DNA of 60,563 bases, the filler included, from Platydemus manokwari (Eukaryota): NCBI GenBank assembly GCA_037951405.1. It is 5 parts of 5 records of this genome, joined end to end, with 100 filler letters (N's around TTAATTAATTAA, not from the genome) between each part and the next. Parts side by side here need not be neighbours in the genome. Positions count along the whole stretch, not along the records: positions 42,105 to 51,673 come from JBBMOY011231320.1; 4 more parts are not named here. One strand, written 5' to 3'. The position numbers and the translations under genes were made by a program. Shown here piece by piece: positions 42,105 through 51,673 of the stretch (position 1 is the stretch's first letter; each line of letters starts with the position of its first letter). The notes below the pieces were generated by a model. That model saw only the letters and a list, made by a program, of their open reading frames with translations, was not told the origin of the DNA and did not search any database.

Positions 42105-43859
42105 TTCATTTTAAAGCGAGTTATAGTATTTTAAAGTATACGTTTACAAACGGCCATTATTTTCCCAACAACCTAATAATAGTCAAAGAAAGCCATTATT
42201 AAAATAATTATTATAACAAAGCCAAGAAGGATTATCAGATTACTATAATGATCATTGAGAATTATTATCATGATTTAAAAACCTAAATCATTAATAAACT
42301 TGGAACTGTGTATTGGGCGCAATGCAAGTCAAGATTCACCTTCCAACAAAGTATAACAGTTTTAATTAATTACAAAGGTTGATTTATTAAATAAGAGAAG
42401 CCAAAATTAAAATAAATTGAAATTACCTACAGATTAAGAAAAATAACTGTAATTAATTTATTAAAAATTTGTTATAATATAAACTCCACTGCGTTTAGTA
42501 ATAAAGTTCTGTTGAGCAGAGACGAAGTCTTGCAGATTCATTGATAGACTTATTGGCTTAATGCTCAAATCATGCGTCAATTCGATTAGACTTTTGTACC
42601 TTGGTTGTATAAGAAGATTTCAAGTACTCACAAATTAAGGAGACCCAAATAGTTTGGCGAAGTTTATCAATGAATAACTTAAATCAAAACAATAACGCGA
42701 GTGAATATACTAAAGATTATTGGGAAAGGAATTGGCTCTGAATATCAAATATTTATTATTAGAATTTTTGTTGAAAAATATAACTTTATATTTTTTCTAA
42801 ATCATCGATAGGAGAATCGAAGACCTTATCAAAATTCTGGACAGAATATTAAGGTTGATAAACTTCATTCTTTTGGAGCAAAACCAAATACCAAAGATGT
42901 TGTTTTGAGGCAAAGCTCGACAGTATAATGAAACACTATAGATTTATAATATCGATCAGTGGTTTATAGGAATTGAAATTACTTTGTCAAAGTGTATGTT
43001 GATCAATGAAGAAATTCACTCAAAGATCTTTTCTTAAATAATGGTTTCCAAATAATTATTGAACAAGGTTCTACTGATTTTAACCCATATTTATATGTTT
43101 TGTCGCACATCGGCGATCGAGCTTTTATTGCCTCATTATTTCATTAATTCAATAAAATTATTTTAATCCTCATGAATTTGAAAAATGTTCTTCATCCATC
43201 ATCACATAATACATGAAAAATTAATAGTTGGAAATTGATTTTATAAACACAAAACAAATGTAAACATTTCAGTTAATAATCGAACTTTTTGTGCCGATCT
43301 GGCCTGATATGCGGAATCCGACACCCAAATAAACGGTTACGACTTATAGAGTTATAAGCTTTATCAATATTCATCTCCAAAACTAATCGAAGCTACAATT
43401 GCAACGAGTGCTTCCGACCACGTGAGAAGTAATAATGAATGGGAATGAACGGTCTTCGAATTCAAATCCACCAATGAGCGAATTATTAAATTAAACAAAC
43501 GGTTTATTGAAATTCCTGCCTGATACTGACAAGTAGTAAGAACTTCATTTGGTTTCCCCGATCTCAAGGGTTACCTCGAGATCAATATTTAAGAAATATA
43601 TTAAAAAGATTAGTTCAGATTAATAGTAAATTAAAGTTATTTTGAATTCATCACAATAGTCTATGTTAGAAATATTTATTAAGTAAAGAACATAAATACT
43701 GCAAAAATACAAAATTCAATATCACAGTGCATAACAAGATACATGTGTTATGACAGTCATGGGCCTATTGAAAGAGGAAAAATATATCGATAAATATTAA
43801 TCTATTCAAATATAATGAGTTAACATTGTGCTCGCTGTACTGTGTCAGATTCACTTTGA

Positions 43860-46800
43860 TTATTTAATGAGGTCGCTTTCTCCAGTTAATTTCAACAAGA
43901 TCTTCAAATAATCTCCTGAGGTGTCATCCTATAAACATTTCTCACAGTATTAGATATTATAATTCTCAACCAGCTACCTTTATCCACTCTCCCAATCTTT
44001 GGGAGAATTCAGCCTGGAAAGCCTTTTTTATTTGAACCATATCTATTTCACATCGAGTTATGACAATTCTCAACAAAGTTCTATCATCGGTACCCAATCC
44101 TTTCATGGCTTTATGAAGAGCTAGTGCAAAATATCTTGGTTTGTTTTGTATGCATCTTACTGGAGAAATAGATGAGATTAATCACAGTTTCTAACAAACA
44201 TTCTCACCGAATGTTACGAGCCCATTCATAATGTCGCCACTCATTTCTGATTTTATTGCCTGTTCCAAAGTCATTTTACTAAGTTTTTCGTATTCTTCAA
44301 ACACTGCTCTCAGGTGTGGATTGGATCGATTAAGAATTATCTGGTGAAATCTGAATAACATTTAAATAAATTGTAATTATGATCAAATTAGTTTTTGATT
44401 ATTTGTTTCGTGATTGGAGTGGCCAATCGTTCGAGTGAATACAGTGAGGAACCTTAGATAATTCTCATACAAAAAACTTAATAATCAAAATGTAAAAAAT
44501 TTGAACTAAAAAATTCATATTAAAGAGAATAAAAAACAAAGTGTTTAGAGGATTAATGTTTGAATCAAGCTTAAAAATAAAACTGAAGCATTTTAAACTT
44601 GACGAAGCCAATGATCCGTCATTATGGAAATCGTCTATTTTGATCAATTCAAAATTTAAAGCCAAATTGGGCTAAATAATCCTCTATTAATAATTACCAG
44701 ATTATTAGGTGGAATCAATAAAGTATTTCAATTCTATCTCAAATTAATTTTCAAAAATCTCTAAAGACATGAATTTTGAATATCATAATTTATATTAAAT
44801 GCCCAGACTCAGGTGATTAATACATTTTAAACACTTTCTGATTATCTTTCTTATTTTGAGAATTCGATTCTTTTCATGCCGTGCTTATATGCTTTATTGT
44901 TTTATAATGTTTTGCTTTGTTCTCATTATTAAATTGAAATGATGAAAAAACAAACCGATACTAGGATATAGAATCAATCAAACTCCATTTTAAATATTTT
45001 TTTACATTTTTATTATAGTTTTTATATTCTTATAATTTTATATGACTTAGTTGATCAGATGTAGTATTCTACACTGGCTTTTTATTAGGTGCGAAGTCGA
45101 GTTTTATTTTGTCAATGTATAAAGGTAGTAGCCAGTATACCCATTACTTTAATAGGTTTTTTATGAAGAAATTATCTGCTTTGACTCGACCTTTTTATGT
45201 AGTTTGAGATTTGTCATAGTTTAATCATGTTCTTCTTTGTCTTTCCTCTTTCTTCTAATTTTATTCAAGTACTGAATCCGGGAATTATATATAGTCCCTT
45301 TTTCCGAGATTTCTTGGTACCCCGAGTTCAGAATGAATGTGAACTTCAATCGGGGACAGAATCCATGGCTAAACGTGGAATTTATTGTCGACTGAGAGAT
45401 AATTTGATTGTATATGGCCCTGTGAATATGATTGTATATGAAGACCAAATCATATAGCCGAGCAAAGAACTATCAATCCGATAGACAAAATATTTCAATT
45501 TTTCAAATCGATAAATCATTTTTGAAGAAATCAAACTCGATTTGAAGAGGGTTATTCAATCAAATTAATAAAATTATTAATTCAAACTTTCAAATCTCTC
45601 AAAAATATTATGTGTACAGGGTTGTCACCCAGTGCATCGCCTGACAAAATTTGCGCAAATTTAATGAAGAGTTAAAAATGACATTCGCTGTGCTGTAATA
45701 AATTCTGCTGATTTAAAAATCTTTTAATTATTGATTGATGAATTACTGTTTGATTATTCAATATCAATAATGTCATGACGGAAAACGCGTCTTTATTGTA
45801 AAGAATTTTATATTATCACACTGTGGTCAACTTTTTGAACAGAAAATCAATCAAGTGCAAATCAGCCTATTTTTGAGTTTAAAGATTTGAATCAACTGTA
45901 AATATTGGCAAAAAAGCACATGCAAACCACATGATTTTAATTAGTGCAATAAAGTTGATGCTATTGCAAATGCTGTGAACGAAATGGGTGACAATTCTCA
46001 ATACGAATGGCATCTAAGAATCTTAGCACATCATAATCTTCTGTTCATTACATTCTTAAAGTGAGCTTGGCTCTCAGAAGATATTTTGAAAATAAAATTT
46101 GAAATGTTTTTCAGGTGGGGTGGGGGTTAGTCAACCCAAAAATAAAAAATCAATATAAACGAAAATGTCAATGTAATTAACTGAATTTCTCTGATTATTA
46201 AAAATAAATGCAGAAAATAAAAGAAAATAAACAATACTTCGACTCATCCGTGCCGAATTTCTTTTCACCAGCCTCGTACAGCTCTTTTGCATCTTGAATA
46301 GCAAGATTTCTGTCAAATGTTTGGCTTTCATCTCGAGAGGCTTGAAGCAATGCAACGAGAAGTCTTTTAAAATGGCTGGACGTTTCACTGATGATGTCCT
46401 TTTCCAAATCTCTGTTTGGATACACTATTTTTGATATAAATTTTTTGAGATTTATCGATTTTTTAAAAACTATGATTACTTCTATTGTATGTCGCTTTAA
46501 ATGCCTTGATTTGGGCATTGGTTCTCGTACATATTATTTCAATTAAGGCATCTTCATCGGTGCCGAGACCTTTCATTGCGAAACGCAATTCCGATGCATC
46601 ATATTCATCAGGACTCAAGCACAGAGCATTACAGATTTTAAAAAAATTCCCACTTAATTCACTATCAAAATCTGCTACCAAATCACGTCCAAAAAGGGTT
46701 TTGAATGTTTGAACGATTGCCATCCTTTGTTTGAAGGATCGACATCCCATGACATCAATTATTGCTGCCTCATCGGTTCCCAGGCCTTTCATTGCAGTGC

Positions 46801-49115
46801 GTAACTTTTCACAATCTGCGTTGACGTTAAAATCGGGGGCAGGGAGTAAGGTTCCTTCTTGCTGAAATGTTATGTATCCACTTATTAATGTGTGAAATAT
46901 TAATATTTATGTTTGTATACCACTTATATATATATATATGTGTGTGTAGGTGTGTGTGTAGGTGTGTGTAGAAAGGATACTAACCACGTATTCTTCAGTT
47001 TCAAAATATGCACTTTCGACTTTCTCGGGTGGCTTTTCTTCAGTTTTCAATTCAATTGGAGCTGCTTTTTCTCCTTTGGCTTGACGAACCTTTTCTTCAA
47101 CAGAATGACCTTTTGGTATTTCTGATGGTTTTGGGCGCAATGATTTCTGAGGCGAAGGAGGTGGTGCGGTTTCTTTAACCGTTTTGGGTTGAGCTAAGGG
47201 TGTCTTGAAACCGGGTTTACCTAGATTAATCGTGACAGTGAAAGATTCGTTACCTTCACTGAAGTCTGCTGCGAATACCTACAATAGTTGAATTAAATTG
47301 CATAGGTGACTATTAACCCACAAGTAGTCGAGTTCTAATGAGATAGAACACAAAAATTAACAGGAAATATCAATTTAATTTAATTTATTCTCTGCTAGAC
47401 AAATGATATAAATAAAATTTTTGGTTCTCCAACCGATACGACCAAAGAATATTAGGATGGGAATTACCTTTGCCATTTTAGCTGAACCAATTGCAGCTTT
47501 GAAATCGGCGTTTCCTCGGGCAAATTGTAATAAATGACCATAAATGTGTTCGATTTGCTTTTTCAAATCCCCATTACCCGGGCTCACGGGCAAAATTTCT
47601 GGTTCGAAACTTCCTTTCGGTTGTTCAACTGGAGGAGGAAGAGCTTTAATCTTAGCATTCTCGAGGTCTTTGAGAGCATTTCTCACTTCTGCTATTGTTG
47701 CTTGCCGGTTCTGGTCGATTTGCTACAGTTTCGACAATTATTGAATGTGACGTCGAATAATATCAAAATAATCAAATAACCTGTGTCAATTGATTAGCAA
47801 TGGCATTCAATTGATGTTGTTGCAATATAGACATATCGGGTTGATGGAATGGTTGTTGTGGATATTGGATCTGTGGTGCATAACCTCCGGAAAATGTTGT
47901 ATTTCCAGGAGTCCGAACATCCCATCCCATTCCAGGATTGCCACCCCATAAATTTATTTGTGTTCCAGAGACATTTGTAGCCGAAAACCCCTGGTCAGCA
48001 GTTCCTATTGGAAAATGGTAATAGTTTTTATCTCAATATTAACTCAATGTTTTTTTAGTACGAACTTTGAAGAAATTGGTCCACTGCATCTTCTGACCAC
48101 GTATGTTGGGGTTTCTTAAGAAAAATTATAGTCGATAACACGATTTTTACATCATTGATTATTTCATTTTTATTTTTCATTTGAAAGGTTTACGCTATAT
48201 ATGAGATACTAAATATAGGTCAGAGAATATATTGATATGAAACCAATAGCCAATCAAAACGAGGGCACAAAGTAAAGTTGTAAGTGAAGGTGAAGTAAAG
48301 TGAAACGACTGGGGGATTGAATTCAACAATGAGACAATTGGTACATCGTGAATTTCAGTTCCTGATCATCGCTTATATCTTGAAAGGAGTACGAAACAAG
48401 TTCAGCGGACAACTTTTTTTACCAATATTTGATTCGAAAACCCTCATAACCCTTGCATGTCGACCTTATCACCAATTACATTAAACATATGCATCTAATG
48501 TTACACCCAATCCGGGCGTTTAAAATTTACAATTCATCGATTTCCACTCCCCCCGCCGATTTTATTTTATAATTTCCAAATTCATTTCATACCGAAGGAA
48601 CGATTTTCGTATTTCGTTTCCCTTCGATGTCGGAATTGTACGAACTATTCGATTCAACTTCATAAATATTTTCATCCTCGCTTCCCATATCGATTTGGTC
48701 GTCGACAAAAAACGTTTTGGTCACAACATGGCTTTCAACTTTAGTCACTCTGACAAAATTCAGTATCTAAAATGAATTAAACAAATAAAAATGATTGCAC
48801 TTGTGCACAGCCATGGCTTTCAAAGTCCTTTTTCCGGGTTTTAATGTAAAAGGACCACTGTATCTAAAGGTGATTTCTTTTCCATTGATAATACGTTTCG
48901 AAGGATTTGGTTTGCATCCGTCAGTTGTGAAATATACAGCACAATTTGGTGTTTCTAAAAATTGATGATACAATGTTATTTTAATTATGATATTTATTAA
49001 TACCAGTATCCAAGTCAATATATGTTCCAGTATCGATATGATTTTGGGGTTTTCCTGATTTATTTAACTTCAACGGGGCTACAACAGGTGCTGCTACTCC
49101 ACCAGCTAATGGCAT
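43860..49115 (-). CDS. Annexin with long DZANK1-like N-terminal region, 12 exons, 735 aa
   Basis: Exons in transcript order: 49115-49004, 48954-48801, 48749-48593, 48114-48066, 48004-47781, 47722-47468, 47278-46985, 46861-46480, 46424-46238, 44350-44208, 44159-43978, 43928-43860. All GT-AG and phase-compatible, 2208 nt. Four annexin repeats ([33 protein letters not shown]...DDTSGDY). The annexin core is certain; exon 48114-48066 is the least certain. Confidence 0.85.
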
Positions 49116-51673
49116 CTTAGTATTTTAATTATTAATTGATTACAAATTTAAAATGGCAGTAATTTGGTAGCTATACTATTCACTAAAATAAACAACTGCT
49201 TTTGTAATATAAACTGATAATATAAACTAATATTATATAAAATTAATATAAAAATAAGTAAAATATTTCATTGTTTTGATTTAGTATTAACCATAATAGC
49301 TTGTAAATATAAAAAATTTAATAAAAATATTTCTATCTAAAAACAGTTAAATTGCAAAAAACAGTAAAAACGTACTTGAATTTATTAATTACATTTTATT
49401 ATTTAGGGCTCATGCATCGTTATAATTTTGAATAATTACGTAACAATTTATTTATAGCTCCACACAATTATCTTTGCATTTGGGTGTAACTTAAAACTCA
49501 ACACAGTAGTCATTAAAAATGTTTATTGTTCAACACTTGGATTTTTATGTATCTCATTCGATGAGAAAAATACAGTTTCTTCATAATTAACAGTTACTTT
49601 TCATAATTTCCAGTTGGACAATTTAAATCTACCGTCACTTTTTGGCTTTTAAATTGAAAAATCATCAATATTAAGAACAATCAATGCATCGATAAATTGG
49701 CCACATATCTTTGCATATGACCAATTAATAAAAATCTAAAAATAACTTAGTTTAAATGACTTTTCAGTAATTCTTTGTATAACATTTTCACAAATATAAG
49801 TTCAATAAGGTTAAAATATTATCGTAGTCTGAATATATAAATACAGTCAGTATTTCCAAGGTAGATATTTAGTACTGTCGAATATCAATACATGCTGATT
49901 ACAATAGTGCACACTTTATTTTATAATGGCTAGGTAATAGATTATTAATAATTAAACAATGTAATGGCAATGGTAATTAAGTAAAAATTACTTTGGGCTT
50001 TAAAAGGTTTCGTAAGCAACAGCATTTTATACTAACAAATGAATCATCCCTGAATTGCTCCTTTTGACAAAATTTCTTTTAATAATAATTTCCTAATGAT
50101 TTCCGTCGAATAACTTTCTGGGAGTAAATAATCTTTGTGAGTGAACTACACTAATTTAAGCTCTTGATATAAGCTAGTTTTCGTGTGAATGATTTGTTTC
50201 TTTGCCATAGTTTGTTGATATTAATTTTTATCATATAATAAAATATTATATTCTTTATTGTCTAACATTTATTTTATTTGTTAGTAAAATTCTTATAAGT
50301 CTGGCTTTAATGAGCCATTTTTCATCTTTATCTGTTTAATTATTATTTATAATTGTTTTATTATTTATCTGTAATTATTATTATTTTATTTTCGTCACTT
50401 ACCTACTTCACACTAATTCATTAATTTTATTATTCTTGTTTAATTCTTAAATTTACTTTATTCCTTGTATCGTTTATTCTTTTAATTTAAATATTTCGTC
50501 ACCATTTGGTTTATTTGTGTTTTGGAACTTAAGAGAATTGCTACGTTTATTGGAGAAAATCAAGTTGTTCTGTGTGTTACTTTTGGGGGTTACTGCGTTT
50601 ATTTATTTATTTATTTTTATTTGATTTGATCAAACTCTACAACTTGATCAGTTCTCAACGTCCGTTTTGACCCTCGGGTAGTAATATTACCTATGAATAT
50701 TGATGTTCTTTCGACTCGATGTTCTCAACTTAAATGTAGATAAGTCGGACGCCGTAGAAATCGATTTAATTAAACTAAACTTTATTTTTGTCTCAATTAT
50801 AGTCTCAACTTTCAATTTATCAGTCTCTTTTAATATTTTAACTATCCAATTATTCCCAATAAAGTGATGAATAATATTGAAATATATAATGATGAAATTG
50901 CGATTCAATATGACCAACGACCTGATCAATAACCAACTAGATTCATTATAAACATATTTCTTATAACTAACAATTATACCAACTATTACTGTATGCAATG
51001 CAATAAAAAGGTTATAAATTACTACCTTTATACGTCATTGATTTTAGCGATACTTTGATACACAAAAAGTTGGATAAAACTTTTCAATATGCAATACATG
51101 GAAGCAGACTGTGGACCAACAAGACACTTCGTGAATATTGGGTTAAGGTCCTTTTCAAGAATTTTTTCCGAGCTCGAGTCGTTAAATAGGGAGAATATGC
51201 GACATAAGTACAATATGCGTATTTTACATGAAATTATCTTATGTTCTTTCTGCATATTCTTCGGGAAATTAGAATATTTCTATTCTATTCCTATACTATT
51301 ACAGGGCATATAATTGAATTTATCTTGGCTTCGGAACTGTTTTAGTGATTTCAATAATAATAATGCTTGTAGTGGCTTTAAACGGGCAAGTGTCATATGA
51401 TGTTCACTGCATTATATAAAGTTACTGGGTCACAGAGAATAATGGGTTTGAATAGAAAAATGCGGGGTTCATTTCCGCTTTCTTGTGTCGATATTTCACA
51501 AATTTAATAGGATTATTTTTGCTGACAATTGTATTGTATTTCGATGTTTTAAAATAGGAGTGAAAATAAGAGTTTTTAAATTAATATTTTTGGTTATTGG
51601 GTAAAAATATTTTTTAATTAGACTTATTTTACTTAGCTAAATATATTAATTTTTAATATTAATCTCCTATTTG

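What the first reader, a model, noticed from the sequence alone, without database searches (positions are those of the whole stretch)
43860..49115. DZANK1-annexin chimeric protein: ankyrin and zinc-ribbon modules absent, complete annexin core present
Seen: 12 phase-compatible exons splice into one 735-aa ORF with no intervening stop. The N-terminus ([53 protein letters not shown]...[22 protein letters not shown]...[10 protein letters not shown]) parallels the Fn3-like N-terminal domain of DZANK1 (AGSVCVPQIIPLR...IYYTLDGSKP...[22 protein letters not shown]...IVTKVFHV, recalled). A second block ([51 protein letters not shown]) parallels the DZANK1 central domain ([47 protein letters not shown]). 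No CxxC zinc ribbons are present; a G/P/Q-rich linker sits there instead. In place of ankyrin repeats come a P/K/E-rich linker and four annexin repeats, all keeping GxGTD-type loops and acidic cap residues. Established: annexins bind membranes Ca2+-dependently, and DZANK1 is linked with NINL to dynein-based transport in ciliated photoreceptors. Inference: a domain-shuffled adaptor that may couple Ca2+-dependent membrane binding to ciliary or dynein trafficking. It may already exist in databases as a generic annexin, but I know of no functional description.
Basis: partly seen in the sequence, partly recalled or inferred. Interest (0 to 1): 0.8.

Follow-up and report, generated by a model that had tools for sequence, protein, structure and literature searches.

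The report
Annexin with a DZANK1-derived head
This is one intact 12-exon flatworm-type gene for an annexin whose N-terminal half descends from the ciliary transport protein DZANK1; the same fusion occurs across flatworms, molluscs, annelids, nemerteans and brachiopods, is labelled only "annexin" in databases, and I found no study of it.

Summary
On the minus strand, 12 exons with GT-AG borders (49115 to 43860) splice into 2208 nt, giving 735 aa plus TAA.

- **Domains.** Pfam finds Fn3_assoc/CHB_HEX_C_1 in exon 2 and four annexin repeats in exons 8-12.
- **DZANK1 kinship.** An exhaustive HMMER search with exon 6 hit a canonical DZANK1 at E 3.5e-4. A profile-profile comparison aligns residues 4-336 collinearly with DZANK1 3-562 (probability 100, E 1e-41). 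The zinc ribbons and ankyrin repeats are absent.
- **One gene, not two.** The same architecture recurs in more than 40 proteins from five spiralian phyla. Several sit on intron-free, cDNA-sized contigs. The peptide across the exon 7/8 joint is conserved between phyla, and the introns between the two halves are only 189 and 123 nt.
- **Placement.** A tree puts the window's protein inside the flatworm clade (100/100).
- **Function.** A nearly invariant SGTQ[IV]N motif in the disordered linker resembles a dynein light chain LC8 site, which leaves a different, testable link to dynein.
- **Literature.** Databases call these proteins "annexin A6-like", "A7/11" or "A11". I found no paper describing the fusion.

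It is a real, catalogued but uncharacterised variant of annexin, of moderate interest.

The parts
43860..49115 (-). Whole coding region: 12 exons, 735 aa plus TAA
   Evidence: Splice model rebuilt. One BLASTP alignment covers model 1-731 and Macrostomum P0001 1-764 at 50% identity.
48593..49115 (-). Exons 1-3 (aa 1-141): Fn3_assoc / CHB_HEX_C_1 beta-sandwich (about aa 10-105), then the start of an acidic/Ser-rich linker
   Evidence: Pfam on exon 2. AF2 of the orthologue gives pLDDT 95-97 for residues 10-105. The best fold match is an accessory beta-sandwich of an Akkermansia glycosidase, 8ayr, at a marginal E 1.6e-3 (no match reached E <= 0.001), rmsd 2.4 over 99 columns. It aligns to DZANK1 3-105.
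48066..48114 (-). Exon 4 (aa 142-158): short linker exon
   Evidence: AG/GT borders. The peptide 'DAVDQFLQR' matches Echinostoma 'SMDNFLRR'.
47781..48004 (-). Exon 5 (aa 158-232): disordered G/P/Q-rich linker where DZANK1 has its zinc ribbons
   Evidence: No Pfam hit. Composition and lack of Cys. The orthologue has pLDDT below 50 here.
47952..47969 (-). SGTQIN motif (aa 170-175) inside the conserved block '[11 protein letters not shown]': candidate LC8/DYNLL-binding short linear motif
   Evidence: [SAY]GTQ[IVM]N is present in 48 of 49 fusion proteins. There is an isolated pLDDT bump (66 against about 45) in a disordered stretch. It resembles the LC8 optimum VSRGTQTE (PMC6607443). Binding is inferred, not shown.
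47210..47596 (-). DZANK1-type central domain core (aa 275-340; spans intron 6): SPGxG loop, HxxxH helix, second helix, beta-hairpin
   Evidence: HMMER hit to eel DZANK1 493-543 at E 3.5e-4 against 1.84e9 proteins. hhalign. S, G, H and H are invariant in 31 sequences. AF2 core pLDDT 85-94. No PDB fold match.
46985..47209 (-). P/K/E-rich flexible linker (aa 341-415), ending in the conserved 'YFETEEY' peptide
   Evidence: Composition. The junction peptide is conserved across phyla.
43860..46861 (-). Exons 8-12 (aa 416-735): annexin core of four repeats, with loops at 46789-46766, 46573-46550, 46263-46243 and 44103-44083
   Evidence: Pfam Annexin. PDB sequence search: annexin VI at 5.7e-90, then A7, B12, A4 and A5. 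Loops and acidic caps.

Best explanation
Shown: this is a single intact protein-coding gene. It is the flatworm-lineage orthologue of a Spiralia-wide annexin family whose N-terminal head is the front half of DZANK1, and it has five parts in order.
1. An Fn3_assoc beta-sandwich.
2. A disordered linker that replaces the zinc ribbons and carries a near-invariant SGTQ[IV]N motif.
3. The DZANK1 central domain: an SPGxG loop, an HxxxH helix and a beta-hairpin.
4. A P/K/E-rich tether.
5. A four-repeat annexin core whose type II Ca2+-site residues are all in place.

Inferred, about 0.4 overall: the annexin core docks on acidic phospholipid membranes when Ca2+ rises, and the tether presents the DZANK1-derived head to its partners. 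The protein would then be a Ca2+-switched membrane adaptor, in the way the N-terminal heads of vertebrate annexins give them partner specificity.

Inferred, about 0.3: one partner is dynein light chain LC8/DYNLL, bound at the SGTQIN motif. NINL is unlikely to be a partner because its binding module is absent.
For: - Gene model.
- Domains.
- DZANK1 homology: HMMER E 3.5e-4 to a canonical Fn3_assoc+DZR+Ank protein. hhalign gives probability 100, E 1.2e-41, collinear over 330 columns.
- Same architecture in Macrostomum, Schistosoma, Trichobilharzia, Echinostoma, Paragonimus, Lingula, Tubulanus, Lineus, Owenia, Paralvinella and many molluscs.
- Nine cDNA-sized contigs carry the whole fusion. One was checked and holds an uninterrupted 792-aa ORF on 3079 nt.
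- The tree follows phyla, with the window in the flatworm clade at 100/100.
- The peptide across the exon 7/8 joint is conserved between phyla. Introns 6 and 7 are 189 and 123 nt, which leaves no room for an intergenic region and promoter.
- Ca2+-site residues.
- LC8 idea: all 121 DZANK1 sequences in hand carry [DE]xx[TSV]QT, and DZANK1 pulls down DYNLL1/2. 48 of 49 fusion proteins carry [SAY]GTQ[IVM]N in a disordered stretch. Motif rules are from PMC6607443.
Against: - There is no transcript evidence from this species. The only run holding the locus is DNA.
- Ca2+ binding, membrane binding and every partner are untested.
- The candidate LC8 anchor is TQI/TQV rather than TQT, with Asn rather than Pro/Asp/Glu at +2. 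Many sequences that do have a TQT anchor fail to bind LC8. The flanking F, Y and W residues could mean the block is a packing element rather than a linear motif.
- The central domain has no structural relative that would hint at what it does.
Confidence: 0.8

Rival explanations
1. Two adjacent genes, a truncated DZANK1-like gene and an ordinary annexin, were joined only on paper by the reader.
For: No RNA data exist for this species. Annexin tetrads normally stand alone.
Against: The full architecture recurs in five phyla, including intron-free cDNA-sized contigs. The joint peptide '[13 protein letters not shown]' is conserved across phyla. The introns between the halves are 189 and 123 nt. 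There is no Met before residue 439, which already lies inside repeat 1.
Confidence: 0.03
2. One reading: the protein couples membranes to NINL-dynein ciliary transport in the way DZANK1 does.
For: The head is DZANK1-derived. DZANK1 works with NINL and dynein in photoreceptor vesicle transport.
Against: NINL binds the ZNF_RBZ zinc ribbons of DZANK1 (aa 244-317), and these are deleted here. The ankyrin repeats are also gone. No expression data link the gene to ciliated cells.
Confidence: 0.1
3. A membrane-organising annexin (repair, exocytosis, tegument or epidermis) in which the head acts only as a self-association or scaffold module, with no motor link at all.
For: Fn3_assoc domains are generic beta-sandwiches. 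The central domain is a small helix-hairpin unit of the kind that often dimerises. Flatworm annexins are abundant surface and tegument proteins according to the parasite annexin literature.
Against: Retention of the DZANK1-specific central domain and of a TQ-type motif across several spiralian phyla suggests a specific shared partner.
Confidence: 0.35
4. A decaying or unexpressed gene copy.
For: Three near-invariant central-domain positions differ in the window: 'IYGHL' for 'IYAHL', and 'SAKMAK' for 'EPKMGK'.
Against: The 735-codon frame is intact, all 22 splice sites are consensus, the Ca2+-site residues are kept, and it is 50% identical end to end with Macrostomum. Other flatworms share similar substitutions.
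Confidence: 0.03

Closest known systems
[quoted passage not shown]
   Same: Both share the N-terminal Fn3_assoc beta-sandwich starting at residue 3-4, and the central SPGxG/HxxxH/beta-hairpin domain. Their order is collinear (hhalign E 1e-41). Both have a Q-centred motif in a disordered stretch.
   Different: There is no double zinc ribbon (the NINL-binding part) and there are no ankyrin repeats. The C-terminal half is an annexin core. DZANK1's [DE]xxTQT motif sits just before the central domain, whereas the fusion family's SGTQIN lies further upstream and is not at the aligned position.
Database orthologues labelled only as annexins: Macrostomum lignano PAA61558.1, Schistosoma 'annexin A7/11', Lingula XP_013384296.1 'annexin A11', Tubulanus XP_074652698.1
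   Same: The architecture is identical: Fn3_assoc, linker, central domain, tether, four annexin repeats. Identity with Macrostomum is 50% end to end.
   Different: This is another species, and no protein more than 50% identical over exon 6 turned up in the 1.84e9-protein library. Linker lengths differ.
Molluscan and annelid 'annexin A6-like' proteins of about 1100 aa (Mytilus, Pecten, Haliotis, Octopus, Owenia)
   Same: They have the same DZANK1-derived head and the same junction motif.
   Different: They carry eight annexin repeats rather than four.
Vertebrate annexins A7 and A11 (long Gly/Pro/Gln/Tyr-rich N-termini) and A6
   Same: They share the annexin core. The best PDB sequence matches are annexin VI and A7. 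Exon 5 also encodes a G/P/Q-rich stretch.
   Different: From my own knowledge, the heads of those annexins are disordered or short helices. This protein has two folded, conserved, non-annexin domains.

Membership tests
Annexin (PF00191) | Four (or eight) annexin repeats of about 70 residues | tested here: met
   Pfam hits in exons 8, 9, 10 and 11. Four endonexin loops. PDB sequence hits at E 5.7e-90.
Annexin (PF00191) | Type II Ca2+-site residues: (K/M)-G-x-G-T loop plus an acidic cap about 40 residues downstream | tested here: met
   Repeats 1, 2 and 4 have K-G-L-G-T-D. Repeat 3 has K-F-G-T-D, the usual repeat-3 form. Caps are SE, SE, SE and DD. This is at sequence level only.
Annexin (PF00191) | Ca2+-dependent binding to acidic phospholipids | not testable with these tools
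   Needs a liposome co-sedimentation assay.
DZANK1 | N-terminal Fn3_assoc domain | tested here: met
DZANK1 | Double zinc ribbon (PF12773, DZANK-type) | tested here: not met
   No Pfam hit in exons 3, 5, 6 or 7. There is no CxxC, and only 2 Cys lie in aa 1-415. The ribbon block of DZANK1 is a gap in the hhalign alignment.
DZANK1 | C-terminal ankyrin repeats | tested here: not met
   No Ank hit; the C-terminal half is annexin.
DZANK1 | Conserved central domain (SPGxG...HxxxH...PxMGK) | tested here: met
   HMMER E 3.5e-4. hhalign. Invariant S, G, H and H.
Spiralian Fn3_assoc-annexin fusion family (unnamed) | End-to-end collinear alignment with family members and placement inside the family tree | tested here: met
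   ML tree with the flatworm clade at 100/100.
LC8/DYNLL-binding short linear motif | An 8-residue strand in a disordered region anchored by T-Q-T or a tolerated variant | tested here: inconclusive
   The window has N-V-S-G-T-Q-I-N. G(-2), T(-1) and Q(0) match the optimum VSRGTQTE, while +1 is I/V rather than T. The surroundings are disordered. Binding is untested.

The most novel reading that the evidence does not exclude
Spiralians own a Ca2+-switched membrane-to-dynein-light-chain adaptor. In it the partner-binding head of DZANK1 (Fn3_assoc, an LC8-type motif and the HxxxH domain) was cut loose from its NINL-binding ribbons and welded to an annexin. Ca2+ transients would then recruit LC8/dynein or LC8-dimerised complexes to vesicle or ciliary-base membranes. 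This would also show that the head of DZANK1 is an independent functional unit.
Probability: 0.15. Interest if true: 0.7.

Novelty: new variant of a known kind. Interest (0 to 1): 0.45.

Why it matters
Annexin heads decide which partners an annexin brings to membranes. As far as I know, the known heads are short or disordered. This one has two folded domains inherited from a ciliopathy-linked transport protein, and it has been kept across five spiralian phyla.

It also acts as a natural separation-of-function version of DZANK1. It keeps the Fn3_assoc and central domains, whose roles are unknown, and it lacks the NINL-binding ribbons and the ankyrin repeats.

Planarians, Macrostomum and schistosomes all allow RNAi, so the function of these orphan DZANK1 domains can be tested directly. 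The schistosome orthologues add a member with an unusual head to a protein family already studied as a source of parasite surface antigens.

Tried and rejected
- **RNA evidence.** The run search found only one holder. Laying it showed DNA contigs covering the introns, with no intron-skipping joints. Splicing in this species therefore remains unverified.
- **ESM Atlas.** Exon 6 gave only sub-threshold bacterial noise. Exon 2 only confirmed Fn3_assoc. DZANK1 gave chordate clusters only.
- **Fold of the central domain.** Foldseek against PDB found nothing better than E about 2. VIA-align wide reached Z 3.5 at most, and only on the low-confidence helices. I make no fold assignment and do not claim a new fold.
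- **Canonical DZANK1 in Spiralia.** The word search with the eel central domain returned 811 hits, but the 120 listed were all vertebrate except one unnamed Logan entry. The question stays open. P0018 is a DZANK1-type fragment about 47% identical to the vertebrate proteins, from an unknown taxon, so probably not from a vertebrate.
- **Zinc-ribbon relic.** '[12 protein letters not shown]' lines up with 'RVNxSDARFCDWCG' in hhalign. I did not pursue this, since no Cys is retained.
- **Other sequence in the piece.** ORFs in the flanks and in intron 9 have no Pfam match. Rfam found nothing in the piece.
- **Literature.** I found no paper linking annexin with DZANK or Fn3_assoc. The parasite annexin survey treats N-termini as merely divergent. 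A DZANK1-plus-spiralian query returned nothing that contained DZANK1.
Full report
**1. Observation**

I read the minus strand of 43700-49300 and rebuilt the splice model in a script. Twelve exons, each with an AG acceptor and a GT donor, join into 2208 nt. That gives 735 codons plus TAA, from the ATG at 49115 to the stop at 43862-43860.

Intron lengths are 49, 51, 478, 61, 58, 189, 123, 55, 1887, 48 and 49 nt. Exons are 40.5% GC against 28.6% for introns. Rfam finds no RNA family in the piece.

**2. Domains in the window's own sequence**

- **Pfam.** Scanning the exons one by one gives CHB_HEX_C_1 (1.4e-7) and Fn3_assoc (5.3e-7) in exon 2. Annexin appears in exons 8 (2.6e-35, two repeats), 9, 10 and 11. 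Exons 3, 5, 6 and 7 have no hit.
- **Solved structures.** Exon 8 matches annexin VI at 5.7e-90, then A7, B12, A4 and A5.
- **Ca2+-site residues.** There are four endonexin loops, at aa 440-447, 512-519, 597-603 and 672-678. Each has an acidic cap about 40 residues downstream.
- **Zinc ribbons.** Residues 1-415 hold only two Cys and there is no CxxC, so zinc ribbons are absent.
- **Linkers.** The stretch that takes their place is G/P/Q-rich. The tether before the annexin core is P/K/E-rich.

**3. Kinship with DZANK1**

An exhaustive HMMER search of 1.84 billion representative proteins with exon 6 alone (85 aa) gave 18 hits. Pfam scans of the long ones split them into two groups:
- Six have Annexin repeats; five of these also have Fn3_assoc. 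The sixth, Paragonimus P0008, lacks the N-terminal domain in that gene model.
- One, the eel protein P0016, has the canonical DZANK1 set of Fn3_assoc, double zinc ribbon and ankyrin. It was hit at E 3.5e-4 over query 35-85 and subject 493-543.
- A DZR-bearing fragment, P0018, was hit at 8.8e-4.

I then built a profile of the window's N-terminal 415 residues plus 17 fusion proteins. I compared it with a profile of 16 vertebrate DZANK1 proteins using hhalign. The result was probability 100 and E 1.2e-41, with 330 aligned columns. Model 4-336 aligns with DZANK1 3-562, collinearly. The zinc-ribbon block of DZANK1 (about 225-420) is one long gap. So the head is the front half of DZANK1 with the ribbons removed.

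An alignment of the central domain from 31 fusion and DZANK1 proteins has invariant S, G, H and H, in the pattern SPGxG...HxxxH.

AlphaFold2 of the Macrostomum orthologue gives three regions:
- a confident beta-sandwich at residues 10-105 (pLDDT 95-97);
- a disordered stretch at 110-236;
- a confident helix, helix, beta-hairpin core for the central domain (pLDDT 85-94).

The sandwich's closest solved structure is an accessory domain of a bacterial glycosidase, 8ayr, with rmsd 2.4 over 99 columns; the match is marginal (E 1.6e-3, no match at E <= 0.001). The central domain has no convincing structural relative.

**4. One gene or two**

The same architecture is found in many species:
- flatworms: Macrostomum lignano, Echinostoma, Paragonimus, Cichlidogyrus (a fragment), seven Schistosoma species (curassoni, mattheei, turkestanicum, bovis, rodhaini, spindalis, plus further bovis entries) and Trichobilharzia;
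- the brachiopod Lingula;
- the nemerteans Tubulanus and Lineus;
- the annelids Owenia and Paralvinella;
- many molluscs.

Mollusc and Owenia proteins are about 1100 aa and carry eight annexin repeats.

Nine family members lie on contigs of 3-5 kb, too short to hold introns. I checked one: a 792-aa ORF runs uninterrupted over 74-2452 of a 3079-nt contig. That is what an mRNA assembly looks like.

The window's protein aligns end to end with Macrostomum P0001. A single BLASTP alignment covers 1-731 against 1-764 at 50% identity. The small exon 4 is supported by Echinostoma.

The peptide across the exon 7/8 joint, 'YFETEEYV|QEGTL', is conserved in flatworm, brachiopod, nemertean and annelid proteins, and is recognisable in molluscs. 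The peptide across the exon 6/7 joint lies inside the DZANK1 central domain.

Introns 6 and 7 are 189 and 123 nt, and the annexin part has no Met before residue 439. The two-gene reading can be set aside, although no RNA from this species was available. The one run holding the locus is DNA.

**5. Phylogeny**

A maximum-likelihood tree of the head region, with DZANK1 as the other branch, recovers each phylum as a clade. It places the window's protein inside the flatworm clade (100/100), between Macrostomum and the trematodes.

This fits vertical descent from a fusion in an early spiralian. It also suggests that the window comes from a free-living or otherwise non-trematode flatworm, which agrees with its AT-rich DNA. 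The species itself is not identified.

**6. Mechanism**

- **Shown.** The annexin core keeps every residue class needed for type II Ca2+ sites, and the head keeps two folded DZANK1 domains.
- **Inferred.** The protein binds membranes in a Ca2+-dependent way and presents the head to partners.
- **NINL.** Dona et al. 2015 (PMC4617706) mapped NINL binding by yeast two-hybrid to the ZNF_RBZ ribbons at aa 244-317, which is the part missing here.
- **DYNLL in DZANK1.** The same paper found that DZANK1 pulls down only the dynein light chains DYNLL1 and DYNLL2, with the site unmapped. All 121 DZANK1 sequences in hand carry [DE]-x-x-[T/S/V]-Q-T just before the central domain. That is a textbook LC8 motif by the rules in PMC6607443.
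- **Candidate motif in the fusion family.** At the aligned position the fusion family has R-Q-x-T, which those rules call a poor anchor. Further upstream, in the disordered linker, 48 of 49 members carry [S/A/Y]-G-T-Q-[I/V/M]-N inside the block 'PFNPxNYSGTQINxWG'. The window has '[10 protein letters not shown]' at aa 167-176.
- **How well it fits.** It matches the phage-display optimum VSRGTQTE at positions -2, -1 and 0, and has a beta-branched hydrophobic residue at +1. In the AF2 model it shows an isolated confidence bump in an otherwise disordered region.

I rate LC8 binding at about 0.3. It is a lead, not a finding.

**7. Comparison and novelty**

The protein is a full member of the annexin family. 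It is not a DZANK1 orthologue, because two defining DZANK1 modules were tested and are absent. It is an orthologue of database entries named 'Annexin', 'annexin A11', 'annexin A7/11', 'annexin A6-like' or 'uncharacterized protein'.

Full-text searches found no paper that connects annexins with DZANK or Fn3_assoc domains. The genome-wide survey of parasite annexins treats N-termini simply as divergent. The held library is incomplete, so a prior description cannot be excluded.

I call it a new variant of a known kind: catalogued by automatic annotation, but with no description that I could find.

**8. Limits**

- I have no expression data for this species.
- Whether spiralians also keep a canonical DZANK1 is unresolved, because the listed hits were all vertebrate apart from one unnamed Logan entry.
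- All functional statements beyond domain content are inference.

Noticed in passing
window:46894-46971 (intron 7): There is a (TG/CA)n-(TA)n microsatellite in the 123-nt intron between the DZANK1-like and annexin halves. Read laying skipped it as a repeat, and contigs break there.
   Followed up: partly
window:45100-46150 (intron 9): Contig depth in the DNA run is about twice that of the flanks. Alternative contigs skip 276, 192 and 57 nt between 45803 and 46083, and several loose ends lie here. It looks like a dispersed repeat or indel haplotypes inside the 1887-nt intron. No Pfam hit and no clear terminal repeats were found.
   Followed up: partly
window:49205-49252: A 13-nt tandem repeat (3.7 copies, TAATATAAACTAA) lies about 100 nt upstream of the start codon, in 21% GC DNA.
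   Followed up: no
DZANK1 proteins P0016 and P0055-P0173 (e.g. P0016 aa 466-472): Every DZANK1 in hand has [DE]-x-x-T-Q-T-x-G-L-F-Y-P-S just before the central domain. This is a canonical LC8/DYNLL motif and would explain the published DYNLL1/2 pull-down, whose site was not mapped in PMC4617706.
   Followed up: partly
P0002, P0005, P0006, P0012 (short Logan ORFs): These genomic exon-sized ORFs from other species all run out just after '...G[KR]VS'. That is the position of the window's exon 6 donor ('MAK|V'), which suggests the intron position inside the central domain is conserved.
   Followed up: no
P0018 (Logan, 372 aa): This is a DZANK1-type fragment with zinc ribbons, a VQT anchor and the central domain. 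It is about 47% identical to vertebrate DZANK1, so probably not vertebrate, and its taxon is unknown. It could help settle where canonical DZANK1 survives among invertebrates.
   Followed up: partly
Central domain, window aa 291-295 (47548-47534): An H-x-x-x-H pair on one helix face is invariant in all fusion and DZANK1 proteins examined ('HIYGH' here, 'HICAH' in DZANK1, 'HVKYH' in schistosomes). It is possibly a metal or partner site, and I have no explanation for it.
   Followed up: no
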